The notes under the pieces are model-generated. The model worked only from the letters and a program-made list of their open reading frames with translations, was not told the origin of the DNA and ran no database searches. 64,000 nucleotides of DNA from Oculina patagonica (taxonomy: Eukaryota): contig NC_135760.1 of assembly GCF_052425735.1 (NCBI RefSeq), positions 19,158,001 through 19,222,000 on the forward strand, read 5' to 3'. Within the stretch, counting starts at the first letter, position 1, and every line of letters starts with the position of its first letter. Below, one piece after another: positions 8,187-55,322 of the stretch. The translations under genes and the position numbers were made by a program.

Positions 8187-8286
8187 ATGTTTTTCCAAAC
8201 GTGTTTTGGAACGTTATTCGTGTTTCTGGCAACAGTCAAGGCGGCACCGTCACCCATCCCCAATCCGAAAGTCGCTCCTTCTCCAG
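8187..8286 (+). CDS. NOWA-like exon 1: signal peptide and Pro-rich linker
   Basis: MFFQTCFGTLFVFLATVKA|APSPIPNPKVAPSP; acceptor CAG at 8171-8173, donor G|GTAAT at 8287. Confidence 0.75.
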
Positions 8287-11200
8287 GTAATGTACCCAAG
8301 CTGCTAAATCGGTTCTCTATCGAAGCCTGAAATTTGCAGACTGCAGACTAAAGAGTATTCCATTACCATTATTGAGAGCTACCGTAACTTGAACAGGCCA
8401 AGCGCAGTGCTATCAAGGCTAACCGGAACGCTATTTGGGCTAACCGGAGTGAAGGTCTGCAAGTGCTTCATCGGTCACAAATGTACATAGCAACGATATT
8501 ATTAAACAGTAAATAAATCTGAAGTTGCTTAGACCTTCGTGTCCCCCTTCGTACCCCCTCTACTAACTATGGTATACGTTTAGAGACGAAGGATCGATTG
8601 AGGAACAAAAGTAGGAGAGTCTGTGAGTTTGTAGAACTGAATGTCAAATCATTTTCTCTATAGCTTATGTTAAAGTATACTTACCATAAAAGGTAATATA
8701 CGAGACACAGCCAAGCATGGGGAATATCTGAGTATTCCCCTAATTTTTCAAAATTATATTTTATGTTCGCATAAAAATTTTAAACGCGTGCAAGAATAGT
8801 ACTTTATATTTACTTTATTTTATAGCATATTTACAGCTTTGGCTTTCTTACCCCAAGCAGTTAGCCTCCATTTGGCTCAAAAACATGAACGGAATTTGGT
8901 CTTTAGACATTTTCTGTTCAACGAAGCTAACAGTCAGTCCTTGAGTTTCGTTCTTGGAAAACTGTTGTACATATTTTTGCGACCGAAAGTTTTATTAATT
9001 TTGAGAGTTAACAAAATATTTGCTTATTGCCTTTCACAGGCTCTCAAGTTGAATTGTTTCTGGAGAAAGAACTGCAGCTGATAAACAAATACCGCTTGAT
9101 GCACGCTGCTGCTCCTCTCCAGCTCTCTCTCGACCTGACCAACAAGGCCGAGTTATGGGCCACGGAACTGGCCAATCAGGACAAAGAGAAAATTGACGTG
9201 AACTCTAAATATGGTCAGAACATTTTCTCGACCAAGGAAGCTAACGACGCTGTTACCAAAAGCGTGCAAACGTGGTACAATCAAATCAGATTTTACGATT
9301 TTCACAGCGCCAAAGGATCGCTCAAGTCATCTTATTTCACGCAGCTGGTGTGGGTGGGCTCCCAGTCAGTCGGGATAGGAAAGGCGCAGAGTGCAAGTGG
9401 GAAAACCTTCATTGTGGCTCTGTTTGATCCTCCTGGAAACAAGGGAAACTATCTGCATAACGTGTTGCCGGTTACAGGTAAGAAAAGCATGTTTGAGGTA
9501 TATTGACAAGGTAAAGTTTTTAAGATAACTGTCGAGGTTTGGTATGAAAAAGTGATGAAAAAACTCTTACAGTAATACGACTTGTAAAACCATCGTGGTC
9601 TTGAACCAAGTCCGTTATCATAGCTTTCCCAAATGGTTAGCGACAGGTCTCAATCCCTGACCAGAAAAAGTGAACTCAAGACTTTTTGGATTGTTAGAAG
9701 GCAGTCTTGATAAGCAGTCTTGGCTTACAAAGATTTCCGGGAGGCGTTTGTTACGCAAGCACGTAACAATATGTGTCAAATTGTAAGCTCAAAGACTCTT
9801 CTTTCGCAGATTTAGAGTTAATTGGGTAAACAAAATGGGAAGGGTATTGATGCAGACATCGATCCCTGGGTACTGTCTTCATAAGTGCATTCTTAGTTCG
9901 TAGACTTGTAAGACACTTTACCCTCTCTGTGATTTTCTTTCCGTCGTGGGTAACCTGCGGTGACTCCACTTCCATCACATCTTGATGAGGAGTAGTCATA
10001 ATGCAAGTTGCTTTAGCTTTTATGCTAAGGAGGAAAGTAAACTGAATTTTCACTAATTAGTTGGAAGCTGGTTGAAAGGGTTGGCAGCAATGCTTTGCCC
10101 GTACACCGACGTTCGATTGCTTGCCCATCATTAAAGGAGCAACAAGTTCTAGCCATCATATGCAAAAGAGCTCCTAAGTCAGCAAGCAAAGTGTCTGTTA
10201 AATAGACTGACAACTTGCCACAATCTTCGACTGGTAGTCCTTTAAAATTCGGCAGCTGAAAGAGAATTTTCCACAGTTCTGAAGAAAACATCATTTCTTA
10301 TTACACCAATTAATAATGCTTTATCTACAAATTGAGTCTACAGCTGTCAGTTAAGTTGTACGTTTCTGTTTCATAGCATAGTAAGAACAGATTGAAAAGG
10401 ACAATTCATAGAGGAATACTAAGCCTATTTCTTAAAAGTCTCCTAAACTACCGCTGCGTAGGAGACTAATGACTAATGACGTGCAACCTCGTAACCAGGG
10501 TCTTCGTGCGCAGTAAGGAACGAAACTCGATGTACGAGATTGTAATTAAAATGACGTGACAAGCGTATGTAAATATGCCTTTTCATGGACCAGTGCGTGT
10601 TCGTCACACACCTTTCATTAGTAATAGAATATTAAACAAGATTCTCGTGTTACGACCAGCAGGCCACTTTTTCTAGCTTTACTCATGAAGGTCATTTGTG
10701 CAGGACATGGAAAAACGGGCACTAAATCAATTGCCAAAGCTTTGCGGCACCTTGGGTTTACGGTATTTGACTGGGAAGAGCAGGCCTTTGACTTTCTGGA
10801 TCATTGGGTCGATGTTTTCCAAAATGGCACCAAGCCAGATGTGAAACGAGTTTACAAGAATGCTGATGCAGTCGTGGATTTCCCAGGAGCCTTTTTCTAC
10901 GAAGAAATACTGGAAGCTTTTCCTGACTGTAAAGTGCTTCTGAGCGAACGAGAGGAAGATTCGTGGATAAAAAGCCTTGTGCGTCAACTGGAAGCGATTT
11001 TTGCCGACCGATCCCAGATTCGATCCATGCTATCGCCAACAACGAGGAAAATGGATTATATTTTGGACTCCTACATTACTGCCACCATTGGCTCTTGTAA
11101 TACAAAGTCCACCTATGTTTTCAGAAAGCGATATCGTATCCACAACCACCGTGTTAAGTCGACTGTTCCCGCTGACAAGCTGTTGGTGTACAACGTAAAA

Positions 11201-14200
11201 CAAGGATGGAAGCCATTGTGTGATTTCTTGGGGTGCGAGGTCCCGACTGATCCCTTCCCACATGAGAACGTCAAAGCTGAAATTAGCAAGACGGCGTTGC
11301 TCATAAGCAGATGTGGCCGGCAGATAAAATGGGAAATGCTGAGAGGTCTTTTGGCAATCGGTTCAGTTCTTGTAATGATTGTAGCAACATTTCTGGCGAT
11401 CTGTTTGAATCAGTAAAATTGACCTCAAGGTAACTAACAACAATGACTTGTTTATTATGCTTTATTCATGATGTTTAGTTTGTTTATCCGATAAAGAAGT
11501 TGTGGCTCATTTAACTTTTTCGTGTATTGTCAGTTCATGAAAAGACTCTCTAAAAACTGGAAGCGTAAATTTAGCCTTAAAGTTCATCGTGTTCATTTTG
11601 TGTAATTGTCGTTAAATTTTAGATGGCTCTGATCCCCCTTCGAATAAGGTTTCTAAACTTTGCACAAATTTGATGTTCTATTAATCACAACAATAAAACC
11701 AGTGGTCATCGAGCTTTTTCTTGAGTGACAAGCACAAATTTGAAATTAAAATTGTGGGTATCTTAAACAGGTTATACTGTTGCTATGGTAAACTTAGGCT
11801 CGATTTCCGCCGTCTTCTCGGGGCTCATTGTCCCAAAAAAAGCGGCTGGGAATCGAGCCAATGGTAAACTGTTATGTCACAACAAAAATGACCACAACTT
11901 GTTCAGTGTGTTCACCAGTGATTGGGTATTTGTTTGACACCATTTTTGTGGCATTGGCTTGTAAAGAGTGGTGGCATTTTTCCATTAAAGTATTGGTGTC
12001 CGTCTACTAATTTTTAACTTCAAAACATTTAATCTTCAACAATCCTTTTTTAACAAATTTTATTAATCCTTTGAGAAAAACTATCTCCTCCCAAACACCC
12101 CCCACAATAACCAAAAAATTTACAAAACACCGCAATACATAATTTGGTGCACAGGTAATGAGCAGAGAGTTCTTATTTTCGGGGGACTTGTCAAAAAATC
12201 GCGAAATTAAAGACCTGCGGAAACGTATTTTTAACGTTACATAATAAGGTGAGGAGACTAATGGCGTGACATAGACCTGTATATAGATTTTGCTCAGCAA
12301 CGTTTTGGTAACGTTAAGTGTTTCGAGCAACCTTTTGTACGCAACCTACTGAGAACAAATGAGCCATCTGATGTATTAACAAACAAAATGAACTCAAAAT
12401 CTGCAGTTGTTTTGATTGCGCAGTAAGGAACGAACATGTGAACGAAGATTGATGACGTGACAGAAAGCTTGTGCAATAACACATACTGCAAATGTGCCTC
12501 AGTTTCATGGACCAGTGCGTGTCAGTCACTAGTAATAGAATATTAAACAAAATTCTCGAGTTACACGCGAAGCAGAAAATTACGGCCTTAAATTGGACAT
12601 CGCATCAGCGGAGCAGGCAATTCTTTTTAGCTTTACTCATGAAGGTCATTTGTGCAGGACGTGGAAAAACGGGTACTAAATCAATTGCCAAAGCCTTGCG
12701 GCACCTTGGGTTTACGGTATTGACTGGGAAGAGCAGAGCTTTGACTTTATGGATCACTGGGTCGATGTTTTCCAAAATGGCACCAAGCCAGATGTGAAAC
12801 GAGTTTACCAGAATGCTGATGAAGTCGTGGGTTTTCCTGGATACTTTTTCTACGAAGAAATACTGGAAGCTTTTCCTGACTGTAAAGTGATCCTGAGCGA
12901 ACGGGAGGAAGATTCGTGGGTAAAAAGTTTTGTGCGTCAACGGGAAGCGAGTTATGCCAACCGATCCAAGATTCAATCCCTTTTATCACCAACATTTAGA
13001 AAAATGGCGTACATTATGGATTCGAATTCCCACATTACTGCCATCAGTTGCTCTTTAAACCCCAAGTCCACCTATGTTTTTAGAAAGCTATTTCGCATCC
13101 ACAACCACCGTGTAAAGTCGATTGTTCCCGCTGATAAGCTGTTGGTGTACAACGTAAAACAAGGATGGAAGCCATTGTGTGATCTCTTGGGGTGCGAGGT
13201 CCCGACTGATCCCTTTCCACATGAGAACGTCAAAGCTGAAATTAGCAAGACGGCGTTTCTCGTAACCAGATGTGGCCGGCAGATAAAATGGGAAGTACAG
13301 AGAGGTCTTTTCGCAATCGGTTCAGTTCTTGTAATAATTGTAGCAATCTTTCTGGCGATCTGCTTATATCAGTAAAATTGACCTCAAGGTGACTAACAAC
13401 AATGACTTTTTTATATTTCTTTATTCATCATGTTTAGTTTGTTTTTGATCCGATAAAAGAGTTATACCGCATTACGAGGTCTCATTGTCAGTTCGTAAAG
13501 ACTCTCTAAAAACTGGAAGGGTAAATTTATCATTAAGCTTTATTCGTTTTCATTTTGTGTAATTGTTGTAAATATTTTAGATGGCTTTGATCCTCGAACA
13601 AGTATTTTAAACATAACAAACATTTGTATCGTACTATGCTAATCACAACTCGACAATAAAACTAGTGGTCATAGACCTTGTTCTTGAATGACAAACACAC
13701 TCACATTTTGAATCATTTTGGGGTGTCTTTGACAGGTTATACTGTTGCTATAGTAACCCGCCAAAGTGACCACAACTTGTTCAGTGTGTTCACCAATGAT
13801 TGGGTATTTGTTGGATACCATTTTTGGTATTAACTGTTAAAGAGTGGCAGCATTTATCCGTCAATGTATAACAGTTGGAAAATACTGGAAACCCTTACCA
13901 ACCACATCTAAATAGGAGGATTCAACATGGTGGATGGCCAAAATGAACCATTTGTTACGATACCTCCTCCGAAGACCTCAGAAAAGAAGATTCATGGGTA
14001 AAAAGATTTGGAATGAAAAGGGACGAAATTTGTGCAGGAGCCCAAAAAGAACTGAAAGCGGGAAGGCCCAAGCTTATTCTTTTATTCTGTTTAGCGCAAT
14101 CGAACAGAAATCAAGTTTAATTTAACAAGACATCGCTGCGTAGAACACAAGAGCAAAATACTTCCGAGCAGTTAGAATGGAACACTACAATGTATAAACG

Positions 14201-17200
14201 AAAGAGACTAATTATATATGATGGAATCTATTAGATTTCGTAGACAGAAATTTCTAATTCATATAATATAAAGGGACGCTGTGAGCAAGAGACCGCCGGT
14301 TTGACCTTTCTCGCAGCTCAAAAGCTTGCTCGCGCGTATCGCATGTCGTTTATCCGTGATATCACACTACAGTATAACGCAATATTTGTTGAGACAACAT
14401 AGGGACATCTACAAAAAATATAAAAATATAAAATAAAATATTACTGTTGTTCAATTGAGCAAATCTACGAAGAAAATGTATTATTTGCATCCTTGGTCTG
14501 TGAATTCATAACAACTGTACTTATTTGAATTCCACCAGATCCTCAGGCTATGCAATGCTACTTATACAATCACTAACAAGCTTCTTATGTTTCAAAAATG
14601 TAAGCTGCAGTTGGATAACAGTCTTTTTCACACACAAGGTGTCAGCTAAGGTGTCAGACCCCTTGTGAAACGCCATCGCTTTTGCATGCATCGCGTGCCA
14701 TTTTTCTTTAAGAGCTAACGTTTAACACTATGCTCCAGGAGGGGCAGGATGACATGCGCCACAACGAGAATCAAAAGGCCCTCAAGCTGCCTCGTGGCAC
14801 AATGTTGCCCGAGTGAAATTGGTGAAAGCGAACAGCTGTTTAAAGAAAATTTGAGACTTTTCACCCCAAATGCAATTTCCTCCTTGGACCTCCACTCAAC
14901 TAAAACTAAAATTTATTTGTCCCATTTGGTGGTACAGATCATAGTTAGGCGGCGAATTAACGATCTTATTTAATATTCCAGTTAGTTGAAAAAGCAATTA
15001 GTTTAGCGTTTTTATTTTTTAACCTTGATATAGTTTTAATGTTTTTATCTACTAGTTTTAATGTTTTATTTACACACGACCCCACAAGCTATGTAGCTTT
15101 TTTATCCCATCGTGTATAAATAAAGGTTTTTTTTTTTTGATTGATTGAAAAGAACAATCCGTGAACTGATCGGACTTAGGCTTAATTTACACGGGACCGG
15201 ACGGGAATCATTTAGATTGGAGTAGACAACTGCTCTTTCAAAGACCGGGAGCTCTGATGAAAACATTTGATCATATTAACACATGCATGTATAAGTTGCA
15301 CACTACAAGTATTAAATTTTTATATCGAGGAAATATAGTTCTTTGGCTAAATTCCAGAGGCAGTACCAGCTTCTTCGGTCATGAAGTTACATGCCTTGTG
15401 TAAATCATCATAACAGTAAAAGCGAGTCAAAACAATGCGAAAATATTCTACTTCGTTTTGTTGCAAATGCACAGCCATAAATGCAGATATTTACAATAGC
15501 AACTGGTGAAGAAATTAAAATAATTTTATTGGCAATCTGTGACCCAACAAACAGAGACCACACAAACAGAGAATGGCAAACTTGTGCTTTGACCGATGGT
15601 ACATACGGGGGTGGGTGGGGAGGGGGCGGGGGCGGGGGGTAATAATGTTGCCACTGACAATATGTACGCATTGTCATAACCTGCAATTAGGCGTTAGTTC
15701 TCGCGGCGGTGTAGTTTAGCATTGTCATGGATCAGTGCGTAAGTGTTCGTGACTAGCGCGTAACACGAGAATTAATAAAAACAACGACCGGTATAAACTT
15801 GACATCACACCATACATGCGAGTTTTGTGCCATATACTTTGATCATGAGGATCATTTGTGCAGGATTACAAAAAACGGGTACTAAATCAATCGCCAAAGC
15901 CTTGCGGCACCTTGGGTTTACGGTATTTGACTGGGAAGAGCAAATCTTTGACTTTGTGGATGACTGGGTCGATGTTTTCCAAAATGGTACTAGGCCAGAT
16001 GTGAAACGACTCTACCAAAATGCTGATGCAGCCGTGGATATGCCTGGGTGTTTTTTCTACGAGGAAATACTGGAGGCGTTTCCTGACTGTAAAGTCATTC
16101 TGAGCGAACGAGAGGAAGAATCGTGGATAAAAAGTTTTGTGAATCAACTAGAACTGGTGGATGCCGCTCGATCCAAGATTCGGTACATGCTATCGCCAAC
16201 GTCGAACAAAGTGAGGTATATCACGGACTCCTATTGGTACGCTGCTTTTGGCTCTTGTAACCCCAAGTCCACCTATGTTTTCAGAAAGCGATATCGTATC
16301 CACAACCACCGTGTAAAGTCGATTGTTCCCGCTGACAAGTTCTTGGTGTACAACGTAAAACAAGGATGGAAGCCATTGTGTGATTTCTTGGGGTGCGAGG
16401 TCCCGACTGTTGCCTTCCCACATGAAAATATCAATGCTGAAATTTCTTCGACGATCCTCATGACCAGATATGGCCGGCAAATAAAATGGGAAATGCAGAG
16501 AGGTGTTTTTGCAATCGGTTCAGTTCTGATAATAATTGTAGCAACATTTCTGGCCATCTATTTAAATCAGTGATATTTAGACTCGATTAGACTCGCATAG
16601 TGAATAACAACAATGACGTCTTCATTAAACTTTTGTTTATTCTTTTAGTTTGTTTTTCATCAAAAAAAGTTATACCGCATCAAGAGACCAAAGTCAACTT
16701 TTTCTACATTGCCAGTTCGTAAAAAAAAGGCTCTCTAAAACTTGCAGCGTAAATTTAATCATTAAGGCTTAAAATAGTTTTTTATTTAAATCTGGCCATA
16801 AGTGACCAAAAACTTCTTCAGTGTGTTCACCAATGATTGGGGCTCATTTCATACCATTATTGTAGCAATTACTAATAAAAGGTGTCCTAACACTGCTCCA
16901 TCAAAGTATAAGGGGGGGAGTTTGAAAATGAAAACATCCGCATGTTCTGAGAGAAATAGAGGGAATCTAGGCGAAGTTTTTCGTTTTGAAAAAATTGTTT
17001 TAGGATCACCGGCTGTTAACGAAAGTGTTTTAGGAAAATCGTCCGCCATTCCGGTTTGTTTGTCTGAGTCATGACGTCACTCGTGCGCTTCGCTATTCTT
17101 TGTATTCACATGACGTCATCAAAGTTCTTAAATCCAAAATCAAACGGTCCCTAAGGACCCTAAGCTGTATTAAATTTTTCATTGGCTATAAGACTTTCTA

Positions 17201-19796
17201 AATATATATTTTTTCAAAGGTTTTTCAGCTCGATAACATCCTTCGATAACATCTCGATAACATCCTAACATCCTTCCTTCAGGCCTTTTGAATTTCGGAG
17301 TTTTACACCACAAGATACATTCAATAATAGTTACAATAGCAATTAGTTAAGAAATTTAAATTATTCAATTGGCAAGCTGTGACACAAACAATGGATGGTA
17401 AGCCTGTGGTTTGACCGTTACGCACCAGGGGAGGGCTCATGCTACCGCTGACGTGATACGTACGTGTTGTCATGGATCAGTGCGTAGGTGTTCGTGACTA
17501 GCGAGTTATATACACATGAGAATAAACAAAACGACGTGAAACTTGAAATCAGAGCATAAAAGCAAGTCTTGAGACACATACTTTCAACATGAAGATCATT
17601 TGTGCAGGATATGCAAAAACTGGTACTAAATCTATCGCAAAAGCCTTGCGGTACCTTGGGTTTACGGTACTTGACTGGGAAGAGCAAATCTTTGACTTTG
17701 TAGATGACTGGGCCGACGTTTTCCAAAACGGCATCAAGCCAGATGTGAAGCGAATTTACCAGAATGCTGATGCAGTCGTGGATATGCCTGGAACCTTTTT
17801 CTACGAAGAAATAATGGAAGCGTTCCCTGACTGTAAAGTGCTTCTGAGTGAACGAGACGAAGATTCGTGGATAAAAAGTTTTGTTAATCAACTGGAATCG
17901 ATGTCTGCTGGACGAACCAAGATGTCGTATATGCTCTCGCCGACAGCGAGGAGAGTAAGATATGTCGTGGACTCGTATGGCAACGCTCTTTTTGGCTCGT
18001 GTAACCCCAAGTCGACCTATGTTCACAGAAAACGATATCGTATCCACAACCACCGTGTAAAGTCGATTGTTCCCGCTGACAAGCTGTTGGTGTACAACGT
18101 AAAACAAGGATGGAAGCCATTGTGTGATTTCTTAGGGTGCGAGGTCCCGACTGATCCCTTCCCACATGAAAATATCAAGGCTGAAATCACCGAGACACTT
18201 TCCAAGACTAGATATGGCCAGCAAATAAAATGGGAAATACATAGCGGTTTTTTTATAATCGGTTCAGTTCTTGTAATAATTGTAGCAATATTTCTGACCA
18301 TCTGTTTATTTAACTACAGTGATATTGACTCATGAGTAAATAACTGATAACAGTGATGTTTTTATAAAACTTTACTAATCATTTTTAGTTTGTTTTTAAT
18401 CCAATTAAGATGTTATAAGGAATTACGAGACCTAATTCAATTTTTTTTATATATAGCCTTATCGTAAAAAAAGACTTTCTGAAAACTTGAAGCGTAAATT
18501 TCATCATTAAGTTTAAATTTTTAATGTGTGTAAATTAATTCACGTTGCTACTCATTGCGTGCCAACAACGCAGGCAGCATCCGCCTTCATTTCGTACAGA
18601 ATTTACGAGTATGGTTCAGCAGAGATCACGTTTACGCACATATATTGGGTATACAAGCATAAAAACTAAAAATAATGCGTCCTTACTCAAATGAGATCTT
18701 AAATAAATTCGGTCACGAAATTGTAAAGAGTCAATTATCACACAACTCTTTAATCCAAATAAAGGAAACACAAATCTTTTAGAATACCTTTGTTGTTGAC
18801 GTGAGCAGAATGAAACACCAACGCAGTCATTTAACATGGCAGGTAGAGAGGGTCTCAATGGGGTGGGGGCTTTTACGGTTAACGGTTAAAATTTTGGCCT
18901 TTTTACGGCTAACGGTTAATTTATTTCCATTACGGTTAACAGAAGTTAAAAGTTAATTTTCATTGTTTTTAATAGTTAAAAATCAATTTCCATTATTGAA
19001 AAACGTATTTTAGGTCTTTGGACCATTTTTGGGACGATGAAGTAAACTAGTTTGGGTTATTTATAATCACTGACCGATTTTTACGGTTAACACATTTTAC
19101 GGCTAACGGTTAAAATTTTCCATTTTTTACGCCTAACGGCTAAATTTTTGGCCGTTTTACGGCTAACGGTTAACCCCATTGAGACCCTCGGTAGACAAAT
19201 TGAGCCATTTCGTAACTAGCCGGACGCCCACTCTTACAAGTGAATCTTATGCTCTCAAAAAAGGCGCGAAAACTTAAATCTTTTTAAATATTAAAATATT
19301 TGTGTGGCGACCCAAAAGGTTCTAAAGCGGGTTGTCCTAGACTCGTTTTCTCTGAAACCTTATGGTTTTGGACAGTTCGTTGATCGACGCCACAGCACAA
19401 GAAACCACATAGTAACAAAAATCAGAGTCGGATTATAATATTTGCCTATGGCATTGGGTTTTTTGACGCGACCACTTAACAAGTCGTCACGCCTCCCTCC
19501 CCCTTGCCCCTTGCCATCCTGCAGTTCTTCAAGTCACAGCGACATAAAATAAGCTGGCCACTACACAGCGACTTCACAGGAATCCCATGGTACACTGCTG
19601 TCTGTATCCACGGGAACTGTCCACGACACAGGTTCACTATTAGTATGCCCTCATTGCCAAAGGCTCTCTTAATTCTTATGCCATATCCTTAACATTAGTA
19701 TTCCTTATTCGGCCTAGCCATCAGTGCACAGTTTTCATTTCTGCCTTAAGTATCGAAATACTTAATGAAATGCTCAGTGACCTGGCCTTTGAATGG

Positions 19797-19827
<31 letters not shown>

Positions 19828-31800: not shown

Positions 31801-34800
31801 CACTCCAAGAAATCACACAACGGTTTCCATCCTTGTTTTACGTTGTACACCAACAGCTTGTCAGCGGGAACAATCGACTTTACACGGTGGTTGTGGATGC
31901 GAAATAGCTTTCTGAAAACATAAGGGGATTTGGTGTTACAAGAGCCACTGATGGCATTAACGTAGCAATCGAACATGTACTCTGTTTTTCTCGCTGTTGG
32001 CGATAACATGGACACAAACTTTGAGCGTGTAGCAAATAGCGATTCCAGTTGACGCATAGCACTTTTCACCCATAACTCTTCATCTCTTTCGCTTAGAATC
32101 ACTTTACAGTCAGGAAAAGCCTCCAGTATTTCCTCGTAGAAAAAGTTCCCCGGCAGATCCACGGCTGCATCAGCATTCTGGTAAATTCGTTTCACATCTG
32201 GTTTGGTGCCATTTTGGAAAACATCGACCCAGTGATCTAAGAAGTCAAAGATCTGTTCTTCCCAGTCAAATACCGTAAACCCAAGGTGCCGCAAGGCTTT
32301 GGCGATTGATTTAGTACCCGTTTTTCCCTGTCCTGCACAAATGACCTTCATGAGTAAAGCTAAGCTATCAGAAGTGGGTTGTGCCTCTGCCGTGATGTCA
32401 AGTTACATGTCGTTGTTTTTATTCTCGTGAACTCGCTCTAGTCACGAACACTTCACTGATGCATGAAAAGGTGTATTATTATACATTGTAGCTACTTTAT
32501 TCTATTCTTATCAGTTGAGAGCTAGAGCATTCAGCTATTAAATTCACGCTGACATCAAATTTACATCTCATATCTATGGACAATAGGATTATACATGCAG
32601 AACTGATGTCATTTCTACATGATAAGGGACCGGTCACTATTAACGTAGAGGGGGAAGGAAGGGCGAAAAGGGGGGGGGGTCAAGGCTGTTTCAGTTGGCT
32701 TGGGGGGAGGGCTAATTTTTTCATAAACCTTAAAATGAGGCCATCATTTTTTAAGGTTTTGCAAGAGGACTTGTCTGTGCTTTTGTAAATGGGATTACTT
32801 CAACTGGAAATGGGATTACTTCAACTGGACACCCAGTTAAAAGAATAGTATCATTACTTTATTGCTTTAATATTTCACAATTAAATAAAAAGAAATCCAG
32901 ATCAGCCTGTTAAGTTTTTTATTTATTTATTTATTTGTTTATTCATACAGGAACATGTAGTTTAGCTTGTTTAAACGGAGTCCTGTCTAAATACTTAAAA
33001 ATAAATAAATAACTTCGATAAAATTAATACTAAAGAAAACCATACAAATTACATTTTATTACTACAGTGGAACCCCGATATAACGATCCTCGATATAACG
33101 ATATTCCCGGTATAACGATGAATATTCTATGTCCCGGCAAAAGTTAGAGTAAAATGTATGGGACTAGCTGAACCCCGATATAACGATCTTCGATATAACG
33201 ATATTCCCGATATAACGATGAGAATTTAGCGGGCCGAACGTAAAATCCTCCCGATATAACGATATTATCAGTTCACAGTCACAATTTTTTTGCAAAACAT
33301 CGAATTTAATGCAATAATATTACAGTTACTGAGTTATCTCTAACGTTTCTGTAAACAGCTTTGTAAAATGATATACGAAAATGATACTGTGTTCTTAGCC
33401 TCTTTATCAAAATTATTCTCTTTATCCTCCTTTATATGCAGTAAAAATACTTGCTAGGTTTACCCCGATATAACGATATTTTCGGTTATTTTTCGCCCAT
33501 ATCGTTATATCGGGAGTTTCAATATAACGATTCCTCGATATAACGATATAATTTTACTGCTCCCTTGGCATATCGTTATATCGGGGTTCCACTGTAGAAC
33601 ACTACATTAAAAGGACTATGTCACGGGGATTTCGCACATATTTGGTCTAAACTGTTCTGAAATAAGTGGTAGGCAACTTTACCGATGAAAAACATTATCT
33701 TTGAACTTTTAACTGAAGATATAACCTTTATTTGGGTTTAGAAATCAACCTTCGGCTATAAATATCGATTTTTTTTTTTGAAGGCGCGCGAAAACTATTT
33801 GAAAACGTTGGCTAACGAAGATATATCACTTTTCCAATTTTTCTACAAAATATGATGAAATTATTGATTTATTCAGGCTTCAAGTTTTAAGAGATTCCTC
33901 CAACTTTCTGAACTTATACAATACAGAAAAGTTGAAATAGCTCTTTCATTATTAAATGCCATAAAATTCAAATTACAATCGAAAACCGTAAAAACCGTGG
34001 AGAAAACCAATGACGCTCAAGTATCCGGCTGAGATTTTGAGAGTCAGTAACGACTTCGTTGTTTTCACTATGAAACATCCTAGAGTGCTACGACTTTGTT
34101 AAGCGTCAAGGATGATTGGAACCTTGTGGCCCGCCCAATGTTTGTCCTTTGAATGCAACAGTTGTGTACGAACGGTTAAATATAACTTGAACCAAAGTAA
34201 GGCGTTCCTACCTAGTTTGTAAGCTTCAAGCTTGCTGAGCAGAATCACATGATCGACCATGTGCGGAAAAGCCATCTTAAAATCAGCTAGAACCGTACCA
34301 TTAACGTGGTTAAATGTCTAAATTGAATAGCAGAGTATCAACTAAATGTGCAAGGGCCGTGCTGTACTGCTTCTTAAATCAAAACTGGTTGTTTATATAG
34401 ATGAGGTCGTGAACATTTGAATATTCAAACAGTAAAGACGTCGTTATTTGTTTACTTTTTCTGAGGCGAGTGTCACGGATTAAAACAGATAGCAAGAACG
34501 GTTATTAAAATTACAACAATTACTGAAGCGATTGCGAATACACGTCTCTGGACTTCCCCATTCATCTGCTGAGCCATTCTGGTCATGGGAAGTGTTTCAG
34601 TGATTTCAGCCTTGATATTTTCATGTGGGAATGGAACAGTCGGGACATCGCACTCCAAGAAATCACACAATGGCTTCCATCCTTGTTTTACGTTGTACAC
34701 CAACAGCTTGTCAGCGGGAACAATCGACTTTACACGGTGGTTGTGGATACGATATCGCTTTCTAAAAACATAAGTGGACTTGGGGTTATGAGAGCCAAAG

Positions 34801-37800
34801 GTGGCATTAAAGTAGGAACCACCTATATAGTTCATTTTTCTCACTGTTGGCGATAACATGGCCGCAAATTTGGATCCTCTCTGTTTCAACGATTCCAGTT
34901 GACGAGCCCAGCTTTTTACCCATGAATCTTCCTCTCGTTCGCTCAGAATAACTTTACAGTCAGGAAAAGCTTCCAGTATTTCCTCGTAGAAAAAATACAC
35001 GGGCATATCCACGGCTGCATCAGCATTCTGGTAAACTCGTTTCACATCTGGCTTTGCACCATTTTGGAAAACATCGACCCAGTGATCCATAAAGTCAAAG
35101 GTTTGCTCTTCCCAGTCAAATACCGTAAACCCAAGGTGCCGCAAGGCTTTGGCGATTGATTTAGTACCGGTTTTTTGAAATCCTGCACAAATGATCTTCA
35201 TGATTAAAGCTATGAAAAGTGACTTGCTCCTCTGCTGTGATGCCAAGTTACACGTCGTTGTTTTTATTCTCATGTATTTACTGATTTAACTCGCTTTAGT
35301 CACGAACACGTCACTGATACATGAAAACGGATATGTTCATATGCAAATTCAACACATGTCCTCCATATGGCCCCGCTCACGCAATCCTTAGTGTAGGGCC
35401 GGACGGGTTGACATGATCCGGTACGGAAAAAGCCGTCCAGCTCCTCACTCGAACGGCTTTATTGCAAAATATTGTGAAAAAAGTTCGCTGTTGTTGCAAA
35501 AAATGAATAACAGCAGCCACCACGGTGAAAGAGAGTCTACTATCCGGATGAACTGTCCGATAATGAAGTTTTCGAACAAGCAAACAGTTTTGATACGAAC
35601 GTCTTTCAGATGAAGCGTCAAAAATCATCGTGGGTTGAAAACGCCGTGAAGAAAACAATGTATGAACGTTTTTTTTTTCAAGTTTCTGAGAGAAGTTGGA
35701 GGAACCAGAGAAATCACAAGCATACCTTTTGCCGACAGCTGGATTAATTACTCTGTAATTTCTACATCAGTGTTCGTAGAAGAGACAAAACAGAGTACAA
35801 ACCCGACACACTTTCCTCCTTCCCGAGAAGCATACCAAGATACTTGGACGACAGCGAAACAAAAAATTAACGTCCTTAAAGACAACGAATCCAGCATCTC
35901 GTCCAGATTACGAAAAGTGTCCAGCCCACTTTTACATGTCTTTTAGGCCTACTCTGGGACCCAAAGTCGCCGTAACTTTGGGCGATAGCTTATTTTTTAC
36001 AAAATAACCGGCGATTTTGGGCGATTTAAGGCGATTTTGGGCGACATTAGGCGACTTTGGGCGATTTTGGGTCCCAGAGTAGGCCTTGGGGCGATTTTAG
36101 TCGATTTTAGCTTATTTTGTCCAAAATTACGGGCGAGTTGGGCGATTTTGGGTCCCAGAGTAGGCACTTTTGGAACGAGTTCGTTAACAGAGAATCGACT
36201 GGCTAATTTTAATTAATATAAATTTTAATTTTAAGAAAAAAAATCTGTACACCCAATACAGCTAATACTGGACGACACGACAAGAGTTTATAGTCATTGT
36301 CTGGGAAATAAAGTCACTCATTCACGATGGGTCTTAACGCTCGCAGCTGATTAACAATTATTATTTCGTTTTTTTTTTTCAGGTAGTGGCGTTGGAAAAA
36401 GAGGGCCATGTAAGTTAAATTCTTTCTGTTTGTTTATATTGCATCTTCAGTGTTCCATAGTGCAGTATCGACCGCCTGCTCAGAACAACAAACTTTTCCG
36501 ATATAACATCCGGTGTAACAAATAGAGGATATTACATGGTTGCGCGGAGATATGAAATTTATCTTCGAGTGTTCAAATCTAAGCAAAAGAAGCTATATAA
36601 TAAACACCCTTATCTCACGAACCTCCCCCTTTGATAAATCTCCTCAAAAAGCAAACCTCCCGATATAACTAACCGTCCCCGTATAATAACTCCGGAAAAC
36701 AACTCCCCTAGTACAAAAACATCCACGTATAACAAGTCTCCCGATACAGCGGTCCTCCACAAATCTTCTGTTTGAACAAACTTCCGATATAATACGAAAG
36801 CAATTCTCCCCACATGACGACCGCCCAGTATATTACATCCCCTTTCCTCTTCACTCTGATAATGACGGTCCTCTCTCATTTGTGTTGTGATGCTATTTAT
36901 GTTCACAGCAAAGTGTCCCGATGGATACAAACTGTACAACAACGTATGCTACAAGTACTTCTCGGGTCCAGTGAACTGGGTACAAGCTTCGGAGAAATGC
37001 GCCGCAGACTTTTCAACGCTAGCGTCGGTAAACAGTCAGGCTGAAGACTTGTTTGTAAGGACTGTTCTGGTAAGTTATAAATGTAAATAGCTGTAAGACG
37101 CGCGGACAGAATTTCAAAACGTCTGTCTGACTTTATTTGTTTGGGATTAAAGCCTTGTGCATCCGATTATACCCCTTGAATTAAGACCATTATTTTTAGG
37201 TTTCCATCGATGTAAACATTTTTTTTGCTTATCCTAGTTTCCCTCTAGAGTTATAATTAGCAGATATGGCTATTTTGTATTGAACAGCTATTTTATAGAA
37301 TTCAATACTTCTAAAACAAGTAAACTCAAGTTTCTCTTGGCAGAAGCCTATTGAATACAAACACGCCCAGTAAATTAATGTACGCATTGCGGTCCTATGT
37401 TTCGACTTGCATTCACCTTGAAACGCAGTTTCCCAAAAAAGGATCTGGGGCGAGTGAGAAAATTTCCAGTTGGACTGGGGAGAGGCCCTGAAAATGTATC
37501 TCGTCTCGCGGCCGGTTGCGAGTCTCTCGCGCGCGAATTTATCGGCTCTTCCCTTCTGCGCTCGTTGTTCATCGAAATCTTGAAAGAAATAAAGACCACC
37601 AGTCCACGCACTTATTAACCATAAAGCTCTACAGTATACAATAAATCTTGTGTTGCACAACTCTTCTTAGTTCCTTGCCCCCGGGTGGGGGATAGCGCTG
37701 GGTGTTGCACAACAGCTGTAAAATAAACTCCATATTTACTTTCCGTACACAGACCTCAGGCGGCGTGTCGGATGCCTGGATTGGCGTAAGTGATTTAAAT

Positions 37801-40800
37801 AATCACGGGGTCATGTCATGGTTGGACGGCAGTGAGCCTCTCTTCATGAACTGGGATTACTACCAGAAGAATTTTCCTGGCAAAAAATGCGGCGTCATCT
37901 TCACTAACGTTAACTGGAAGTACAAACCGTGCGATGGAGCCAGAGGGTTTATTTGCAAGCGATCTCTCAGGGGTTAGTAGATTCTAGCATTATATGAAGT
38001 AGTTCTTTTTTTTTTTAACGAGACCCAGCCAAGTTTACTCTTGCTTATGGAAAACGAAGGAGAATAGTTTCAAGCAAAGTGTCAAAAATAACTTTCTCGT
38101 TGAAGCGCACAAGATCATTGCGCCCGCGATCGTGGCCTTCAGTGAATAACTAACGACTGAGAACCAATCAGATTCGCGTTTATAAGTTACGCACTTTTCA
38201 CTGAGTAACAGTAGGTTAATTTATCCTTGGCACAATTTATACTTTCACGACGGCGGAGTGTCAAACAAGAATAACTCACTTGAATTTTGCTCTGAATCAA
38301 AATCATTGTTTGCACGAAAACATGAGCTTGTTTCATACATAAGTAATACTTGCTGTTAATTAATTTTTAGGCATTACAGAATACTTGGTACTCATCCGTT
38401 ACGAAAACAAACTCTGGACTGACAACCTCTACGTCCCAGGAAGCCCTAGGCACCAGGCCCTTAGCAGGCATATCCAAGAAGCGGTAAGCTCGTACTGACG
38501 GTTTTTGCAGGAGCCTAGTATTGACTTCTTCTGTTTCTGTTGGTTATTGCAAAGACAATTTTTTCTTTCTACACAAATGAATGGTTTTATTGCCTTTACT
38601 GCAAAAGCAGGAAGCACGTTGATCAAATATCTCTTATGCCATTCAGCATAATAGTTTTACAGAAAATATATATCTCTTTTGTTAACTAAAGAGCCCCCTT
38701 AATTAACCGTCCTCGTGCGCCCATTTCCGCCTGAATCTGTGTTTAACATCTATTTTCCTTGAAATGTCACCAATGCATTTCACCAGAACAGGGCCGTAAC
38801 CAGACATTTTCCCTAGACGAGGCAAGGTCTTGCTAGGGGATCCTGGGTACATGCCCTTCAGAAAACTTTGAAATCTAGAAGCTCTGAAACTCTTTTTTCA
38901 ACATTTTTCATAGGTATTTTTTAAGAAAAAACAAATGTTGTTCAACTTGGAATTCTTTTCCCAAAAAACATATTTTGTTTTTAATTTTGGGTTAAAATCT
39001 AGACGAGGCAAGTGCCTCGTCTTGCCTCTTGCTAGTTACGGTCCTGCAAAATATATGAATATTGATCACAATAGGAATTAGTGAGTACAGAATTGCAAAA
39101 AAAAAAACACAGTGTCGAGTTCAGCGCTTATGGAATTAACCAAACGAGTCCGTTTCGTTTTCTTTTTGATTTACAGTTTCTGGATGTGTATGGTGACTAC
39201 GATTGGTTTGAACAAGTTTCTTTGGATCATTTCAGGTAAGTACAGATGAAACATAACGGTTATTTAAGCTGTCACGCAACGCTTCTCTGTGTGACACGCA
39301 AAGGTCATAGAATTATTAACAGCACAGCTAAACAAGTACATGCAGTGTCCCATTTTTCCCAGGGTTAATCGAATAGTCGAGAACGCGCGTTGCGTCTTTT
39401 CATGCAAGGTGTTTTCGCGCGCTAGAGTGTTCGCCTACGAGTGGCGTGTTTTTTTCTGATTAATAGTAATCAGGTAATTGTACTGAGTGGAGTACATTGG
39501 AATTCACTTCAGGTAGTAATTGGGAGAGTAACGAGCACGATTATTCTCTGAATTGTACTACACGACGTCCTATTAATAATTAATCGCATGAATCATGACA
39601 AAACATTTCGCGATTAGGAAGTCTGAGAACTTTTTTGTGTGAAGAACTTAAACAGCAGGAAAAAACGCGAAAAAGAACCCATCTAGGTTCACATGATTGA
39701 CGTGAAAATGGCGTTGATGTGATCACGCGCCAATTGAGAGATTAAGCACGACCTTTGTTTTCCCGCGAACGGCAAAAATTCGACTTTTGCCGTCTACCGT
39801 TTGGTGTTCGTACGCGGAAATGATTAGTTTTGTGTTTCTTGTAAATGTGGATTTTTTCCCTATTTTTTTAAGGGATTAATTTTAGAATTCGATAAAAAGG
39901 TAACAAAATGAAAGGCAAGCTCACGCTTACCGTTTGCCGTATAACGTCATACTTAATCTCTCTAATAACGCGACAAATAAGCACGCGCCGGAACCAATCA
40001 AAATCGAGAATTTTATTATAGATAAGATTGTTGAGATTAAGCACCGTCTTGGTTGCGCGATTTCCGTTGATTATTTTATTTTCCCAACAGCAAAGGAAAA
40101 GAAGACAAAATATTGGCGCATGTCAAGCTGAGTTTCACCCCAGATGACGACTCTCCCGCTGACCCGATCAAGCTCCTCCGAGACTCCATTCAAGGAAGTG
40201 ATTCTCCTAAAAGAAGTTCAATCACTGGAACACTCCATGGGGAAAAGGTCGAACTTGTCAACGCTACTATGATTGTTGGTAAGTGTTCATAAAATACGTA
40301 AAGCTGAAGTGTAGATGGAGGACAGTATCACCGCAAAGTAAGTGCCGTATAGGGACAGAGTTACTGGCGCGCGCGCGAGGCCCACGCGCGAACCTACGCC
40401 TGCACGTACGTCTTATATATCTAAGGCGTACATGTACCTAACTTGCGATCAGGTCTTCTTTTTTCGAAAAGGAGGAAGAAAAACGCCTCATTACTCGGAG
40501 TGATAAGAAGGGAGGGAGGGCATGATCTCAGGTTTACATGTATCTTTCTGAAACAGACAATTGAGCCGTTGTTCTGTCTTTTTGCTAGAAATTCCAAGAA
40601 ATCCCATGAAATTCCTTATTACAAACACAGGGATTGACAAATCTCAAACCCCCAGTTTTACAAATTGACAATTTGGCATTAAACCGGGTCAAGCTTTAAC
40701 TAATTGTCTTGTAAACGCTGGTTTTCATGTAGTCTACAAACGCAGTCCGTTTCTGGCTTGTTGTTTCCCCACTGTGTTTAAAATCGACGTCAAAATCTAA

Positions 40801-53673: not shown

Positions 53674-53768
53674 CATTATATTGCGCCCGCGATCGTGGCC
53701 TTCAGTGAATAACCAACGACTGAAAACCAATCAGATTCGCGTTTATAAGTTACGCAATTTTCACTGCG

Positions 53769-54455: not shown

Positions 54456-55322
54456 TCATTGATTAAAACAGATAGCAAGAACAGTTATTACAATTATTAC
54501 AAGAACTGAACCGATTGCAAAAACACCTCTCTGTACTTCCCGATTCACCTGCCGACCCCATCTGGTCATTGAAAGTGTCTTACTGATTTCACCTTTGATA
54601 TTTTCATGTGGGAAGAAAACAGTCGGCACATCACACTTCAAGAAATCACACAATGGCTCCCGGGGGGGGGGGGGGACTCGCATATGAAAGTGACGGGGAT
54701 GCTCGTCGTCTCGCTTAGGGGTGTAAATTTCGGACTTTTGGTCTCGCTTAGGGTGTTCCGGAAAAAAACGCCCAAAACGCCAATATTTTTAGCCATAATG
54801 GTCTCGTTTAGGGTTACACACGAAGAAATATACAAATATAAACTCCATTCTTAGTTTTTTTGTATCTTTTAGGGGTCAAGAAAGGCTTGAGCCACACCCA
54901 GATTGGTCTCTTTTAGGGGTTCTTTTCAAAATTTCCGACGAGCATCCCCGTCCGTTTCATATGGGAGTCCCCCCCCCCCGGGCAATGGCTTTCATCCTTG
55001 TTTGACGTTGTACACCAACAGCTTTTCAGCGGGAACAATCGACTTTACACGGTGGTTGTGGATACGATATCGCTTTCTGTGAACATATGTGGACTTGGGG
55101 CTACAAGAACCAAAGGCAGCGTCCCAATAGGAGCCCACGATATATTTCACTTTCTCCGCTGTCGGCGATAGCATCTCCACCTTGGATCCTGCAGCAGAGT
55201 CCGATTCTAGTTGATTCGCAAAACTTTTTACCCACGAATCTTCTTCCCGTTCGCTCAGGATCACTTTACAGTCAGGGAAAGCCTCCAGTATTTCTTCGAA
55301 GAAAAAAGTTCCAGGCAGATCC
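54456..55322 (-). pseudogene. Sulfotransferase-like copy 12, 5'-truncated and MITE-interrupted
   Basis: Homology starts at DLPG (55322); a MITE is inserted at 54659-54982 within GxKPLC. Confidence 0.85.
54659..54982. mobile_element. MITE with CCCG(G)n termini and 8-bp TSD
   Basis: CCCGGGG..GACTCGCATATGAAA...TTTCATATGGGAGTCCCC..CGGG flanked by CAATGGCT. Confidence 0.9.

What the first reader, a model, noticed from the sequence alone, without database searches (positions are those of the whole stretch)
8187..42319. Hidden NOWA-like nematocyst-wall gene whose 27-kb intron hosts a sulfotransferase gene array
Seen: pieces that look like unrelated ORFs (CAP at 9 kb, lectin at 37 kb, Pro-rich at 41 kb) splice through canonical, phase-matched junctions into one ~917-aa frame. 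Exon 2 ends in a phase-1 donor (9478) and the orphan microexon at 36383 begins in phase 1; I found no better partner for either. Known: Hydra NOWA has the order SCP/CAP, C-type lectin, minicollagen CRDs. Inference: this is an anthozoan NOWA-like gene with nine sulfotransferase-like copies or remnants and an LTR element nested in intron 2 (9478-36382). Automated annotation would probably split it into separate genes.
Basis: partly seen in the sequence, partly recalled or inferred. Interest (0 to 1): 0.85.

Follow-up and report, generated by a model that had tools for sequence, protein, structure and literature searches.

The report
Coral NOWA-like gene, sulfotransferase-filled intron
The scattered pieces really are one nine-exon coral gene for a probable stinging-capsule structural protein, and its second intron has swollen from about 1 kb to 27 kb by taking in a family of working sulfotransferase genes; NCBI RefSeq already carries this exact protein, so it is a tidy but fairly ordinary case.

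Summary
Observation confirmed. The window is Oculina patagonica. Nine GT-AG, phase-matched exons (8187-42319, + strand) give a 917-aa protein identical to RefSeq XP_078360926.1 (LOC144645285, "uncharacterized"). The gene is therefore not hidden in RefSeq. The submitter's GenBank annotation does split it: CAP exons fused to the first sulfotransferase (KAL9981465.1), and the lectin part given a spurious first exon (KAL9981471.1).

The exon 2 -> microexon -> lectin join appears in an uninterrupted ortholog mRNA (Logan SRR12053382 contig, 934 aa). It also fits the compact orthologous genes in Nematostella and three other corals, where intron 2 is about 1 kb or less.

Architecture: signal peptide, CAP, invariant GVGKRGP microexon, C-type lectin, SEA, CRD, 433-aa Pro/Gln/Tyr spacer, canonical minicollagen CRD. 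This is NOWA-like in domain order, but it has 2 CRDs rather than 8. Orthology to Hydra NOWA was not tested.

Intron 2 (26,905 nt) holds nine Sulfotransfer_4 copies: seven intact, one frameshifted, one fragment. dN/dS among the window's nine intact copies is about 0.37. It also holds a young LTR element. The array continues downstream of the gene (four more copies), next to a decayed duplicate of exons 3-5. Anthozoan NOWA-like genes are already published. Interest is modest.

The parts
8187..8286 (+). Exon 1 (coding part): start codon and signal peptide MFFQTCFGTLFVFLATVKA; ends in phase 1. An in-frame upstream ATG at 8151 gives RefSeq isoform X1 (929 aa).
9040..9477 (+). Exon 2: cysteine-free CAP/SCP domain, closest solved relative GAPR-1/GLIPR2. 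Ends in phase 1 at donor CAG|gtaaga.
   Evidence: In all homologs conservation stops exactly after ..PVTG, and the donor is conserved in L001, L003 and L005.
9478..36382 (+). Intron 2, 26,905 nt. The orthologous intron is 888 nt in L005 and 1,037 nt in Nematostella L001.
10685..11413 (+). Sulfotransferase copy 1 (Sulfotransfer_4, 243 aa, intact). Holds the cryptic acceptor (exon start 10704) used by submitter model KAL9981465.1.
12639..13372 (+). Sulfotransferase copy 2, frameshifted (two frames).
15845..16570 (+). Sulfotransferase copy 3, intact.
17589..18332 (+). Sulfotransferase copy 4, intact.
21079..21174 (+). Sulfotransferase fragment (residues 2-33 only, with a stop).
21369..22094 (+). 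Sulfotransferase copy 6, intact.
24293..25018 (-). Sulfotransferase copy 7, intact, antisense to the host gene.
26880..31477 (+). LTR retroelement. 860-nt LTRs (26880-27739 and 30618-31477) differ at one position. The same 4 bases (CCGC) flank both ends. Internal gag plus zinc knuckle ORF 28040-29320; no RT or integrase domain found.
31632..32351 (-). Sulfotransferase copy 8, intact.
34479..35201 (-). Sulfotransferase copy 9, intact; sister of downstream copy 11 in the tree.
35503..35554 (+). Spurious first exon of submitter model KAL9981471.1 (MNNSSHHGERESTIRMN..). It has no signal peptide and a weak donor GTCCGA. The orthologous introns of 888 nt (L005) and 1,037 nt (L001) were not searched for a counterpart.
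36383..36409 (+). Exon 3, 27-nt microexon encoding (G)SGVGKRGP. GVGKRGP is invariant in four coral orthologs and GIGKRGP is found in Nematostella.
36909..37069 (+). Exon 4: first half of the C-type lectin domain.
37753..37972 (+). Exon 5: second half of the C-type lectin domain. No EPN/QPD or WND motif is visible.
38371..38483 (+). Exon 6: start of the SEA-like domain.
39177..39235 (+). Exon 7: SEA-like domain, middle.
40091..40278 (+). Exon 8: SEA-like domain, end.
40872..42319 (+). Exon 9: variant CRD CPSYCLSQQCMPTQCSPWCC, a 433-aa spacer (26% Pro, 18% Gln, 9% Tyr, no Gly-X-Y), canonical CRD CPAPCPIACAPACTPSCC, then the stop codon.
44733..45457 (-). Sulfotransferase copy 10, outside the gene, broken (stop and frameshift).
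46368..47093 (-). Sulfotransferase copy 11, outside the gene, intact.
51298..53680 (+). Decayed duplicate of exons 3-5: microexon twin 51298-51324, exon-4 twin 51760-51924, and exon-5 twin 53481-53680 with an in-frame stop and a frameshift.
54459..55324 (-). Sulfotransferase copy 12, outside the gene, broken and lacking its N-terminal end.
56156..56881 (-). Sulfotransferase copy 13, outside the gene, intact.
58591..59463 (+). RNase_T-type exonuclease ORF. It is the conserved 3' neighbour of the gene in other corals and marks the ancestral end of the locus.

Best explanation
Positions 8187-42319 (+ strand) are one nine-exon gene of Oculina patagonica, RefSeq LOC144645285. It encodes a 917-aa secreted protein: signal peptide, cysteine-free CAP domain, a conserved linker microexon carrying a Lys-Arg pair, a six-Cys C-type lectin domain, a SEA-like domain, and a Pro/Gln/Tyr-rich spacer of about 430 aa capped at each end by a minicollagen-type cysteine-rich domain. 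By analogy with Hydra NOWA, minicollagens, CPP-1 and Cnidoin (inference), the protein is probably secreted into the growing cnidocyst vesicle. There it would be locked into the capsule or tubule polymer by disulfide exchange between its two CRDs and those of minicollagens, with the CAP, lectin and SEA domains displayed. The invariant KR in the microexon is a candidate convertase cut that would release the CAP domain (inference only). The ancestral gene was compact, about 7-8 kb, with intron 2 at 1 kb or less and an RNase_T exonuclease gene as its 3' neighbour. In the lineage leading to Oculina, single-exon Sulfotransfer_4 genes entered intron 2 and multiplied there by tandem and inverted duplication. 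A block holding the 3' end of the intron plus exons 3-5 was later copied to the downstream spacer. A young LTR element then inserted. The intronic sulfotransferases are independent genes under purifying selection, not debris. Host transcription must read through them, and the 26.9-kb intron is removed as a unit.
For: Gene model: all borders are GT-AG with no stops, and the protein is identical to XP_078360926.1. Join across intron 2: Logan contig SRR12053382_7512 (L002, 3,283 nt) has an unbroken 934-aa ORF reading ..NVRPVTGSGVGKRGPSNCPDGY... Its blastn blocks against the window and against L005-L007 end at the predicted exon borders, at mRNA positions 589, 776, 999, 1109, 1168 and 1364. A JGI contig (P0180, 950 aa) and Montipora capricornis P0181 (999 aa) show the same architecture. 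Synteny: Nematostella L001, L005, L006 and L007 have the same exon order, and the CAP exon lies 0.45-1.2 kb from the first lectin exon. In every homolog the CAP ORF loses similarity right after PVTG. Domains: Pfam finds CAP, Lectin_C and SEA. The CRD motifs are invariant in four orthologs and their only PDB hits are NOWA CRDs 2hm3/2hm4/2hm6 and minicollagen 1zpx. Function of CRD-capped spacers: PMC6910907 and PMC10014300. Array history: there are no sulfotransferases in L001, L005, L006, L007 or L010, but they follow the CAP exon in L003, L009 and the P0008 contig. In the tree all downstream copies sit inside the clade of 3'-intronic copies, with ST9 next to ST11, and the twin exons 3-5 lie downstream. 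dN/dS is 0.26-0.49 at dS 0.29-0.54. The LTRs are 859/860 identical.
Against: No read or cDNA from O. patagonica itself was seen spanning 9477/36383. The RefSeq model is a prediction whose evidence I could not inspect. The ortholog transcripts resemble the compact-gene corals (NVRPVTG and NVKPVSG types), so splicing across a sulfotransferase-filled intron is not directly shown in any species. In L003, L009 and the P0008 contig the flank ended before the microexon, so nesting there is inferred, not seen. Six of the nine intronic copies are on the host's strand and presumably carry their own polyadenylation signals, which could cut host transcripts short. Cnidocyte expression, CRD cross-linking and KR cleavage are all inferred from other species. 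The lectin domain lacks the usual Ca/sugar-binding motifs, read by eye from the sequence. SEA scores 23.7 bits in the whole protein, below Pfam's cut-off of 26.4, and 27.6 bits on the excised piece.
Confidence: 0.85

Rival explanations
1. There are two independent genes, as in the submitter's GenBank annotation. One is a short secreted CAP-only protein that ends in or just after exon 2. The other is a lectin-SEA-CRD protein of 755 aa that starts at its own first exon, 35503-35554.
For: KAL9981471.1 (P0169) is such a model. Exon 2 reads through to a stop after 9 more codons. A Logan contig holds exactly that 159-aa ORF (P0176). Older literature treated Nematostella CAP proteins as short single-domain proteins (PMC3627010).
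Against: The proposed first exon has no signal peptide and a weak donor, GTCCGA, although the protein is built of extracellular, disulfide-rich domains. Ortholog mRNAs join CAP to lectin. Sequence conservation stops exactly at the exon 2 donor in more than a dozen homologs. The same submitter pipeline also chains neighbouring sulfotransferase ORFs through one recurring cryptic AG, which is typical of ab initio artefacts. RefSeq gives the joined model.
Confidence: 0.06
2. Exon 2 splices into the first intronic sulfotransferase (acceptor at 10702-10703), giving a CAP-sulfotransferase fusion protein of 440 aa (KAL9981465.1).
For: The junction is GT-AG and phase-compatible, and a deposited model uses it.
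Against: The splice removes the first seven residues of a sulfotransferase ORF that is otherwise a complete, conserved, single-exon gene with its own ATG. No homolog with CAP plus Sulfotransfer_4 appeared among the CAP search results. Corals with the compact gene have no sulfotransferase at the locus at all. A signal peptide would place a PAPS-dependent enzyme with a C-terminal hydrophobic tail in the wrong compartment (inference).
Confidence: 0.03
3. In the Oculina lineage the host gene is no longer functional. The 27-kb gene-filled intron cannot be processed and the exons are a slowly decaying relic.
For: The intron is about 30 times larger and contains same-strand genes. A partial duplicate of exons 3-5 nearby has already decayed.
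Against: All nine exons are intact over 2,751 nt and every splice site is canonical. The sulfotransferase copies have diverged to dS 0.3-0.5, and at least three other genomes share sulfotransferases after the CAP exon, so the arrangement is old. By contrast, the unconstrained twin of exon 5 has picked up a stop and a frameshift. That contrast argues the true exons are under selection.
Confidence: 0.04

Closest known systems
RefSeq LOC144645285 (XP_078360926.1, isoform X2; XP_078360925.1, isoform X1), Oculina patagonica
   Same: Identical protein, 917 aa, and therefore the same nine coding exons.
   Different: It is named only 'uncharacterized protein'. The record seen here carries no link to NOWA or CRD proteins and no comment on the nested genes.
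Hydra NOWA (nematocyst outer wall antigen; Engel et al. [quoted passage not shown]
   Same: A secreted protein with an N-terminal CAP/SCP domain, then a C-type lectin domain, then minicollagen-type CRDs. The CRDs of this protein hit NOWA CRD structures 2hm3/2hm4/2hm6 first.
   Different: Hydra has eight tandem C-terminal CRDs (PMC10014300). Here there are two, separated by a 433-aa Pro/Gln/Tyr spacer, and a SEA-like domain sits between the lectin and the first CRD. Orthology was not tested because no Hydra NOWA full sequence was available through the tools.
Nematostella NOWA-like genes: NVE17236 'highly derived homolog of NOWA' (PMC6161364) and NvNOWA-1 to -4 (PMC12549020)
   Same: These are anthozoan, cnidocyte-expressed lectin proteins called NOWA-like. 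Nematostella has a clear ortholog of the present gene at DS469607.1:233-254 kb.
   Different: I could not map the published gene IDs to that locus, so identity with any of them is unproven.
Minicollagens, CPP-1 and Cnidoin (CRD-spacer-CRD capsule wall proteins of Hydra; PMC6910907)
   Same: The C-terminal half is a low-complexity spacer capped by six-Cys CRDs. The C-terminal CRD has the canonical CX3CX3CX3CX3CC spacing.
   Different: There is no Gly-X-Y collagen run. The spacer is Pro/Gln/Tyr-rich rather than polyproline or silk-like, and is much longer. It is fused to CAP, lectin and SEA domains.
Nested (intronic) genes and tandem gene-family expansions in coral genomes (for example the sulfotransferase PF00685, P450 and esterase expansions in Acropora, PMC12314368)
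   Same: Complete genes multiplied by local duplication, with Ks around 0.35 between copies and transposons alongside.
   Different: Here the family is Sulfotransfer_4 (PF17784). The array sits inside an intron of another gene and has carried three host exons with it in a later duplication.

Membership tests
NOWA (nematocyst outer wall antigen) | Signal peptide / secretory protein | tested here: met
   The N-terminus MFFQTCFGTLFVFLATVKA|AP is a hydrophobic leader, read directly from the sequence. No predictor was run.
NOWA (nematocyst outer wall antigen) | N-terminal SCP/CAP domain | tested here: met
   PF00188 at residues 45-159, E 9.4e-15, found in all 4 orthologs.
[quoted passage not shown]
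   PF00059 at residues 210-312, E 1e-14, found in 4 of 4 orthologs.
NOWA (nematocyst outer wall antigen) | C-terminal array of eight minicollagen-type CRDs (PMC10014300) | tested here: not met
   Only two six-Cys motifs, at 443-462 and 896-913, separated by a 433-aa spacer. They do resemble NOWA CRDs.
NOWA (nematocyst outer wall antigen) | Orthology of the CAP and lectin domains to Hydra NOWA in a tree | not tested
NOWA (nematocyst outer wall antigen) | Expression in developing nematocytes and presence in the capsule or tubule | not testable with these tools
   Only indirect support: a Nematostella NOWA-like gene is cnidocyte-specific by in situ hybridisation (PMC6161364), and its identity with the L001 ortholog is unknown.
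Minicollagen-type CRD proteins (minicollagen / CPP-1 / Cnidoin class) | Six-cysteine CRD with pattern CX3CX3CX3CX3CC | tested here: met
   CPAPCPIACAPACTPSCC at 896-913 is canonical. CPSYCLSQQCMPTQCSPWCC has 3-4-4-3 spacing. All 12 Cys are invariant in 4 orthologs. PDB hits are NOWA and minicollagen CRDs only, with E 0.014 and 0.22, which is weak because the motifs are short.
Minicollagen-type CRD proteins (minicollagen / CPP-1 / Cnidoin class) | CRDs flanking a central spacer | tested here: met
   The spacer, residues 463-895, is 26% Pro, 18% Gln and 9% Tyr.
Minicollagen proper | Central Gly-X-Y collagen triple-helix repeats | tested here: not met
   No run of four or more Gly-X-Y triplets anywhere in the protein.
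SEA domain | Match to PF01390 above Pfam's cut-off | tested here: inconclusive
   23.7 bits in the whole protein (cut-off 26.4) and 27.6 bits on residues 300-450. 3 of 4 orthologs match at E<0.01. The AF2 model is moderately confident only in this region, with beta-alpha-beta-beta-alpha-beta order. No G/SVVV-type self-cleavage motif was seen by eye.
Sulfotransfer_4 (PF17784) for the intronic ORFs | Full-length match to the family profile and solved relatives | tested here: met
   E 5.5e-56 over profile positions 1-214 of 215. PDB relatives are 9kf1, 8y9p and the schistosome oxamniquine-activating sulfotransferase.
Nested intronic gene arrangement | Complete, selectively maintained genes lying wholly inside an intron of a host gene that is spliced across them | tested here: inconclusive
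   The genes are complete, with dN/dS 0.26-0.49, and the host model is in RefSeq. Splicing across the filled intron was not seen in reads from this species.

The most novel reading that the evidence does not exclude
The gene may encode a precursor that is cut in two. The invariant microexon (GVGKRGP in all four corals, GIGKRGP in the sea anemone) may exist to supply a dibasic convertase site. In that case one transcript would deliver two cnidocyst products: a free GAPR-1-like CAP domain, and a lectin-SEA-CRD wall or tubule protein. A bolder add-on: the tail-anchored sulfotransferases that colonised intron 2 are not passengers but are co-expressed in cnidocytes and act on capsule or tubule components, making the locus a lineage-specific gene-within-gene functional module.
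Probability: 0.15. Interest if true: 0.55.

Novelty: new member of a known kind. Interest (0 to 1): 0.3.

Why it matters
The result fixes a concrete annotation conflict in a chromosome-scale coral genome: the GenBank models KAL9981465.1 and KAL9981471.1 are chimeric or truncated, while the RefSeq model is right. It gives the RefSeq 'uncharacterized protein' a reasoned identity. It shows that the CAP-lectin-CRD layout, once called medusozoan- or Hydra-specific (PMC3627010, PMC4195985), is conserved from sea anemone to stony corals in a variant with SEA, a Pro/Gln spacer and two CRDs. It also offers a clean, datable example of intron growth by gene-family invasion, from about 1 kb to 27 kb, with compact and expanded states both available in related corals. 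That is useful for studying how host splicing tolerates same-strand nested genes. None of this overturns current views.

Tried and rejected
1. The HMMER search of 1.84 billion representatives with the CAP exon was dominated by multi-CAP proteins and found no full-length ortholog. It was uninformative for the join.

2. Exact-sequence look-ups of P0169, P0171 and P0181 for genomic context returned 'not on record'. I therefore could not see RefSeq's gene calls in the intron or Montipora's intron 2.

3. The P0008 contig had gene calls but no DNA.

4. AlphaFold2 on residues 1-470 with a 4-row alignment gave mean pLDDT 39. I made no fold search because the model is unreliable outside residues 318-435.

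5. I tried to tie the Nematostella ortholog to the published IDs NVE17236 and NvNOWA-1 to -4 through paper supplements. These hold only names and expression values, no sequences or coordinates.

6. Searching the papers for SRR12053382 found nothing, so the species of the transcript contig is unknown.

7. Pfam on other ORFs in and around the intron found nothing (29299-30330, 35380-35766, 19988-20341, 47.4-51 kb, 60.3-61.2 kb). I rejected my own impression that there is a reverse-transcriptase remnant at 60.6 kb.

8. NCBIfam gave no useful hit.

9. I considered horizontal origin or retroposition of the single-exon sulfotransferases but did not test it.

Full report
**What is there**

The window has no N runs. 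It comes from the stony coral Oculina patagonica, because its last-exon and sulfotransferase translations match NCBI proteins of that species exactly. Exons 8187-8286, 9040-9477, 36383-36409, 36909-37069, 37753-37972, 38371-38483, 39177-39235, 40091-40278 and 40872-42319 all have AG/GT borders and matching phases. They give one frame of 917 codons. This protein is identical, residue for residue, to RefSeq XP_078360926.1, 'uncharacterized protein LOC144645285 isoform X2'. Isoform X1 merely starts at an upstream in-frame ATG (8151).

**The annotation conflict**

- KAL9981471.1 (755 aa) starts at an invented first exon, 35503-35554. It has no signal peptide and a weak donor, GTCCGA, and is joined to the microexon.
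- KAL9981465.1 (440 aa) splices exon 2 into a cryptic AG inside the first sulfotransferase ORF, with the exon starting at 10704.
- The same pipeline chains neighbouring sulfotransferase ORFs through the same ..ICAG| codons, which marks these joins as ab initio artefacts.

**Is exon 2 really joined to the microexon 27 kb away?**

Three independent lines say yes.
1. Homologs of the CAP exon from more than a dozen cnidarian genomes are conserved up to ..NV(L/R/K)PV(T/S)G and diverge immediately afterwards. The GT donor is conserved in Nematostella and two other corals. This is an exon end, not a protein end.
2. The exons keep the same order and strand in four other genomes, with the CAP exon only 0.45-1.2 kb from the first lectin exon. 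These are Nematostella (L001) and three corals (L005, L006, L007). A 27-nt microexon with identical borders encodes GSG(V/I)GKRGP in between. Intron 2 is 1,037 nt in L001 and 888 nt in L005, against 26,905 nt here.
3. A 3,283-nt Logan contig (SRR12053382_7512, L002) carries an uninterrupted 934-aa ORF with CAP, microexon, lectin and the rest. Its blastn blocks against the window and against L005-L007 break exactly at the predicted exon borders. A JGI contig (950 aa) and a Montipora capricornis protein (999 aa) have the same layout.

What is missing is a read from O. patagonica itself across 9477/36383. The transcripts also look like those of corals with the compact gene.

**The protein**

- Pfam finds CAP (45-159), Lectin_C (210-312) and a borderline SEA domain: 23.7 bits in the whole protein and 27.6 bits on the excised piece, against a cut-off of 26.4. 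Three of four orthologs match SEA.
- The CAP domain has no cysteine and is closest to Golgi-associated PR-1 (1smb, E 5.5e-16).
- The lectin domain has six Cys. By eye it lacks the EPN/QPD and WND motifs of sugar-binding C-type lectins.
- The last exon encodes CPSYCLSQQCMPTQCSPWCC, then 433 residues of 26% Pro, 18% Gln and 9% Tyr without any Gly-X-Y run, then CPAPCPIACAPACTPSCC and the stop.
- All twelve Cys are invariant in four orthologs.
- Against all PDB sequences, the only hits of these motifs are the NOWA CRDs 2hm3/2hm4/2hm6 and minicollagen 1zpx. E-values are 0.014 and 0.22, weak because the motifs are about 20 residues long.
- An AlphaFold2 attempt was unreliable, with mean pLDDT 39. 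Only the SEA-like segment reached 65-78.

**How it most likely works (inference)**

In Hydra, CRD-bearing proteins (minicollagens, NOWA, CPP-1, Cnidoin) are secreted into the post-Golgi cnidocyst vesicle and become part of the capsule or tubule polymer through disulfide exchange between CRDs (PMC6910907, PMC10014300). The present protein has the leader, the two CRD caps and a long stiff-looking spacer. I therefore read it as a cross-linkable cnidocyst matrix, wall or tubule component that displays CAP, lectin and SEA domains. The microexon's GVGKRGP is invariant from coral to anemone, so a dibasic processing site that frees the CAP domain is a reasonable but untested idea.

**Comparison with NOWA**

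The domain order CAP, lectin, CRD matches. The number and arrangement of CRDs (two versus eight), the SEA domain and the spacer do not. I could not obtain a full Hydra NOWA sequence, so orthology is untested. [quoted passage not shown] I could not map those IDs to the Nematostella ortholog.

**The intron and its surroundings**

tblastn finds nine Sulfotransfer_4 copies in intron 2.
- Seven are intact: 10685, 15845, 17589 and 21369 on the + strand; 24293, 31632 and 34479 on the - strand.
- One is frameshifted (12639-13372).
- One is a 96-nt fragment (21079-21174).

Four more copies lie downstream of the gene on the - strand. The copies at 46368 and 56156 are intact, and those at 44733 and 54459 are broken.

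Each intact copy is a single-exon gene of about 242 aa with its own ATG and a C-terminal hydrophobic tail. Pairwise dN/dS among the nine intact copies is 0.26-0.49 at dS 0.29-0.54, so they are maintained genes and the array is old. Their closest solved relatives are 9kf1, 8y9p and the schistosome oxamniquine-activating sulfotransferase.

An LTR element lies at 26880-31477. It has 860-nt LTRs differing at one base, the same four bases on both flanks, and gag plus a zinc knuckle but no recognisable RT or integrase. It is a recent insertion.

**History**

Corals L005/L010, L006 and L007, and Nematostella, have no sulfotransferase at the locus. In L005, L006 and L010 an RNase_T exonuclease gene lies 1-2.5 kb after the last exon. 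Here that gene is 16 kb away, at 58591-59463. Three other coral genomes (L003, L009 and the P0008 contig) have sulfotransferase ORFs within 2-10 kb after the CAP exon. This fits a shared, lineage-specific invasion of intron 2, although the flanks ended before the microexon.

In a maximum-likelihood tree, copies 1-4 form one clade. Copies 6-9 group with all the downstream copies in the other, and copy 9 pairs with downstream copy 11. A decayed duplicate of exons 3-5 lies at 51298-53680. Its microexon twin is intact, and its exon-5 twin has a stop and a frameshift. The simplest reading is that the 3' end of the filled intron, together with exons 3-5, was copied into the downstream spacer. The decay of the twin exons contrasts with the intact true exons and argues that the host gene is still under selection.

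**Verdict**

However, the exact protein is already in RefSeq, anthozoan NOWA-like genes are already published, and nested genes and tandem sulfotransferase expansions are familiar features of coral genomes (for example PMC12314368). What is new is modest:
- a reasoned identity for LOC144645285;
- a demonstrably wrong pair of GenBank models;
- a conserved KR microexon;
- a well-bounded case of an intron inflated about thirty-fold by a living gene family.

Noticed in passing
window 51298-53680 (+): A partial duplicate of host exons 3-5 lies 15 kb downstream of the originals. The microexon twin differs at 1 of the 21 coding bases compared and keeps the same AG and GT borders. The exon-4 twin is 89% identical in protein. 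The exon-5 twin carries an in-frame stop and a frameshift.
   Followed up: yes
window 44733-56881 (-): Four further Sulfotransfer_4 copies, two intact and two broken, lie outside the host gene, between it and the exonuclease gene. They nest within the clade of 3'-intronic copies.
   Followed up: yes
window 10685-11413 and the other intact sulfotransferase ORFs: Every intact copy ends in a roughly 20-residue hydrophobic stretch (..AIGSVLVxIVxxxLAICxNQ). This suggests a tail-anchored membrane sulfotransferase, which is unusual for this enzyme class.
   Followed up: partly
window 10702-10704 and equivalent sites in other copies: The submitter's GenBank models KAL9981465.1, KAL9981466.1, KAL9981467.1 and KAL9981474.1 chain adjacent sulfotransferase ORFs, and in KAL9981465.1 the CAP exons, at a junction that removes the downstream copy's start (after MK.ICAG in three of them). 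The acceptor itself was located only for KAL9981465.1 (AG at 10702-10703). These look like systematic ab initio artefacts.
   Followed up: yes
window 26880-31477 (+): A very young, pol-less LTR element. Its 860-nt LTRs differ at one base, it has TG..CA ends, CCGC on both flanks and a TGG.. primer-binding-like site, and it encodes gag plus a zinc knuckle and a 344-aa ORF with no Pfam match.
   Followed up: partly
window 58591-59463 (+): An RNase_T / DNA_pol_A_exo1 exonuclease ORF. It is the conserved 3' neighbour of the NOWA-like gene in L005, L006 and L010.
   Followed up: partly
L009 2241-2978: In another coral genome (ERZ25878340) a Sulfotransfer_4 ORF also lies about 7 kb upstream of the CAP exon, so in that species the array may extend 5' of the gene as well.
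   Followed up: no
L001 10355-11153: In the old Nematostella assembly the CAP exon region contains about eight tandem repeats of a short piece encoding SVRSWYNQIR, between the two halves of the CAP domain. This is either an intronic minisatellite derived from exon sequence or an assembly artefact.
   Followed up: no
window 3282-5098; 47313-48259 and 50401-50801: An 804-nt tandem duplicate at 97.9% identity lies upstream of the gene. Internal tandem repeats at 47.3-48.3 kb have an inverted copy at 50.4-50.8 kb. No Pfam match was found in their ORFs.
   Followed up: partly
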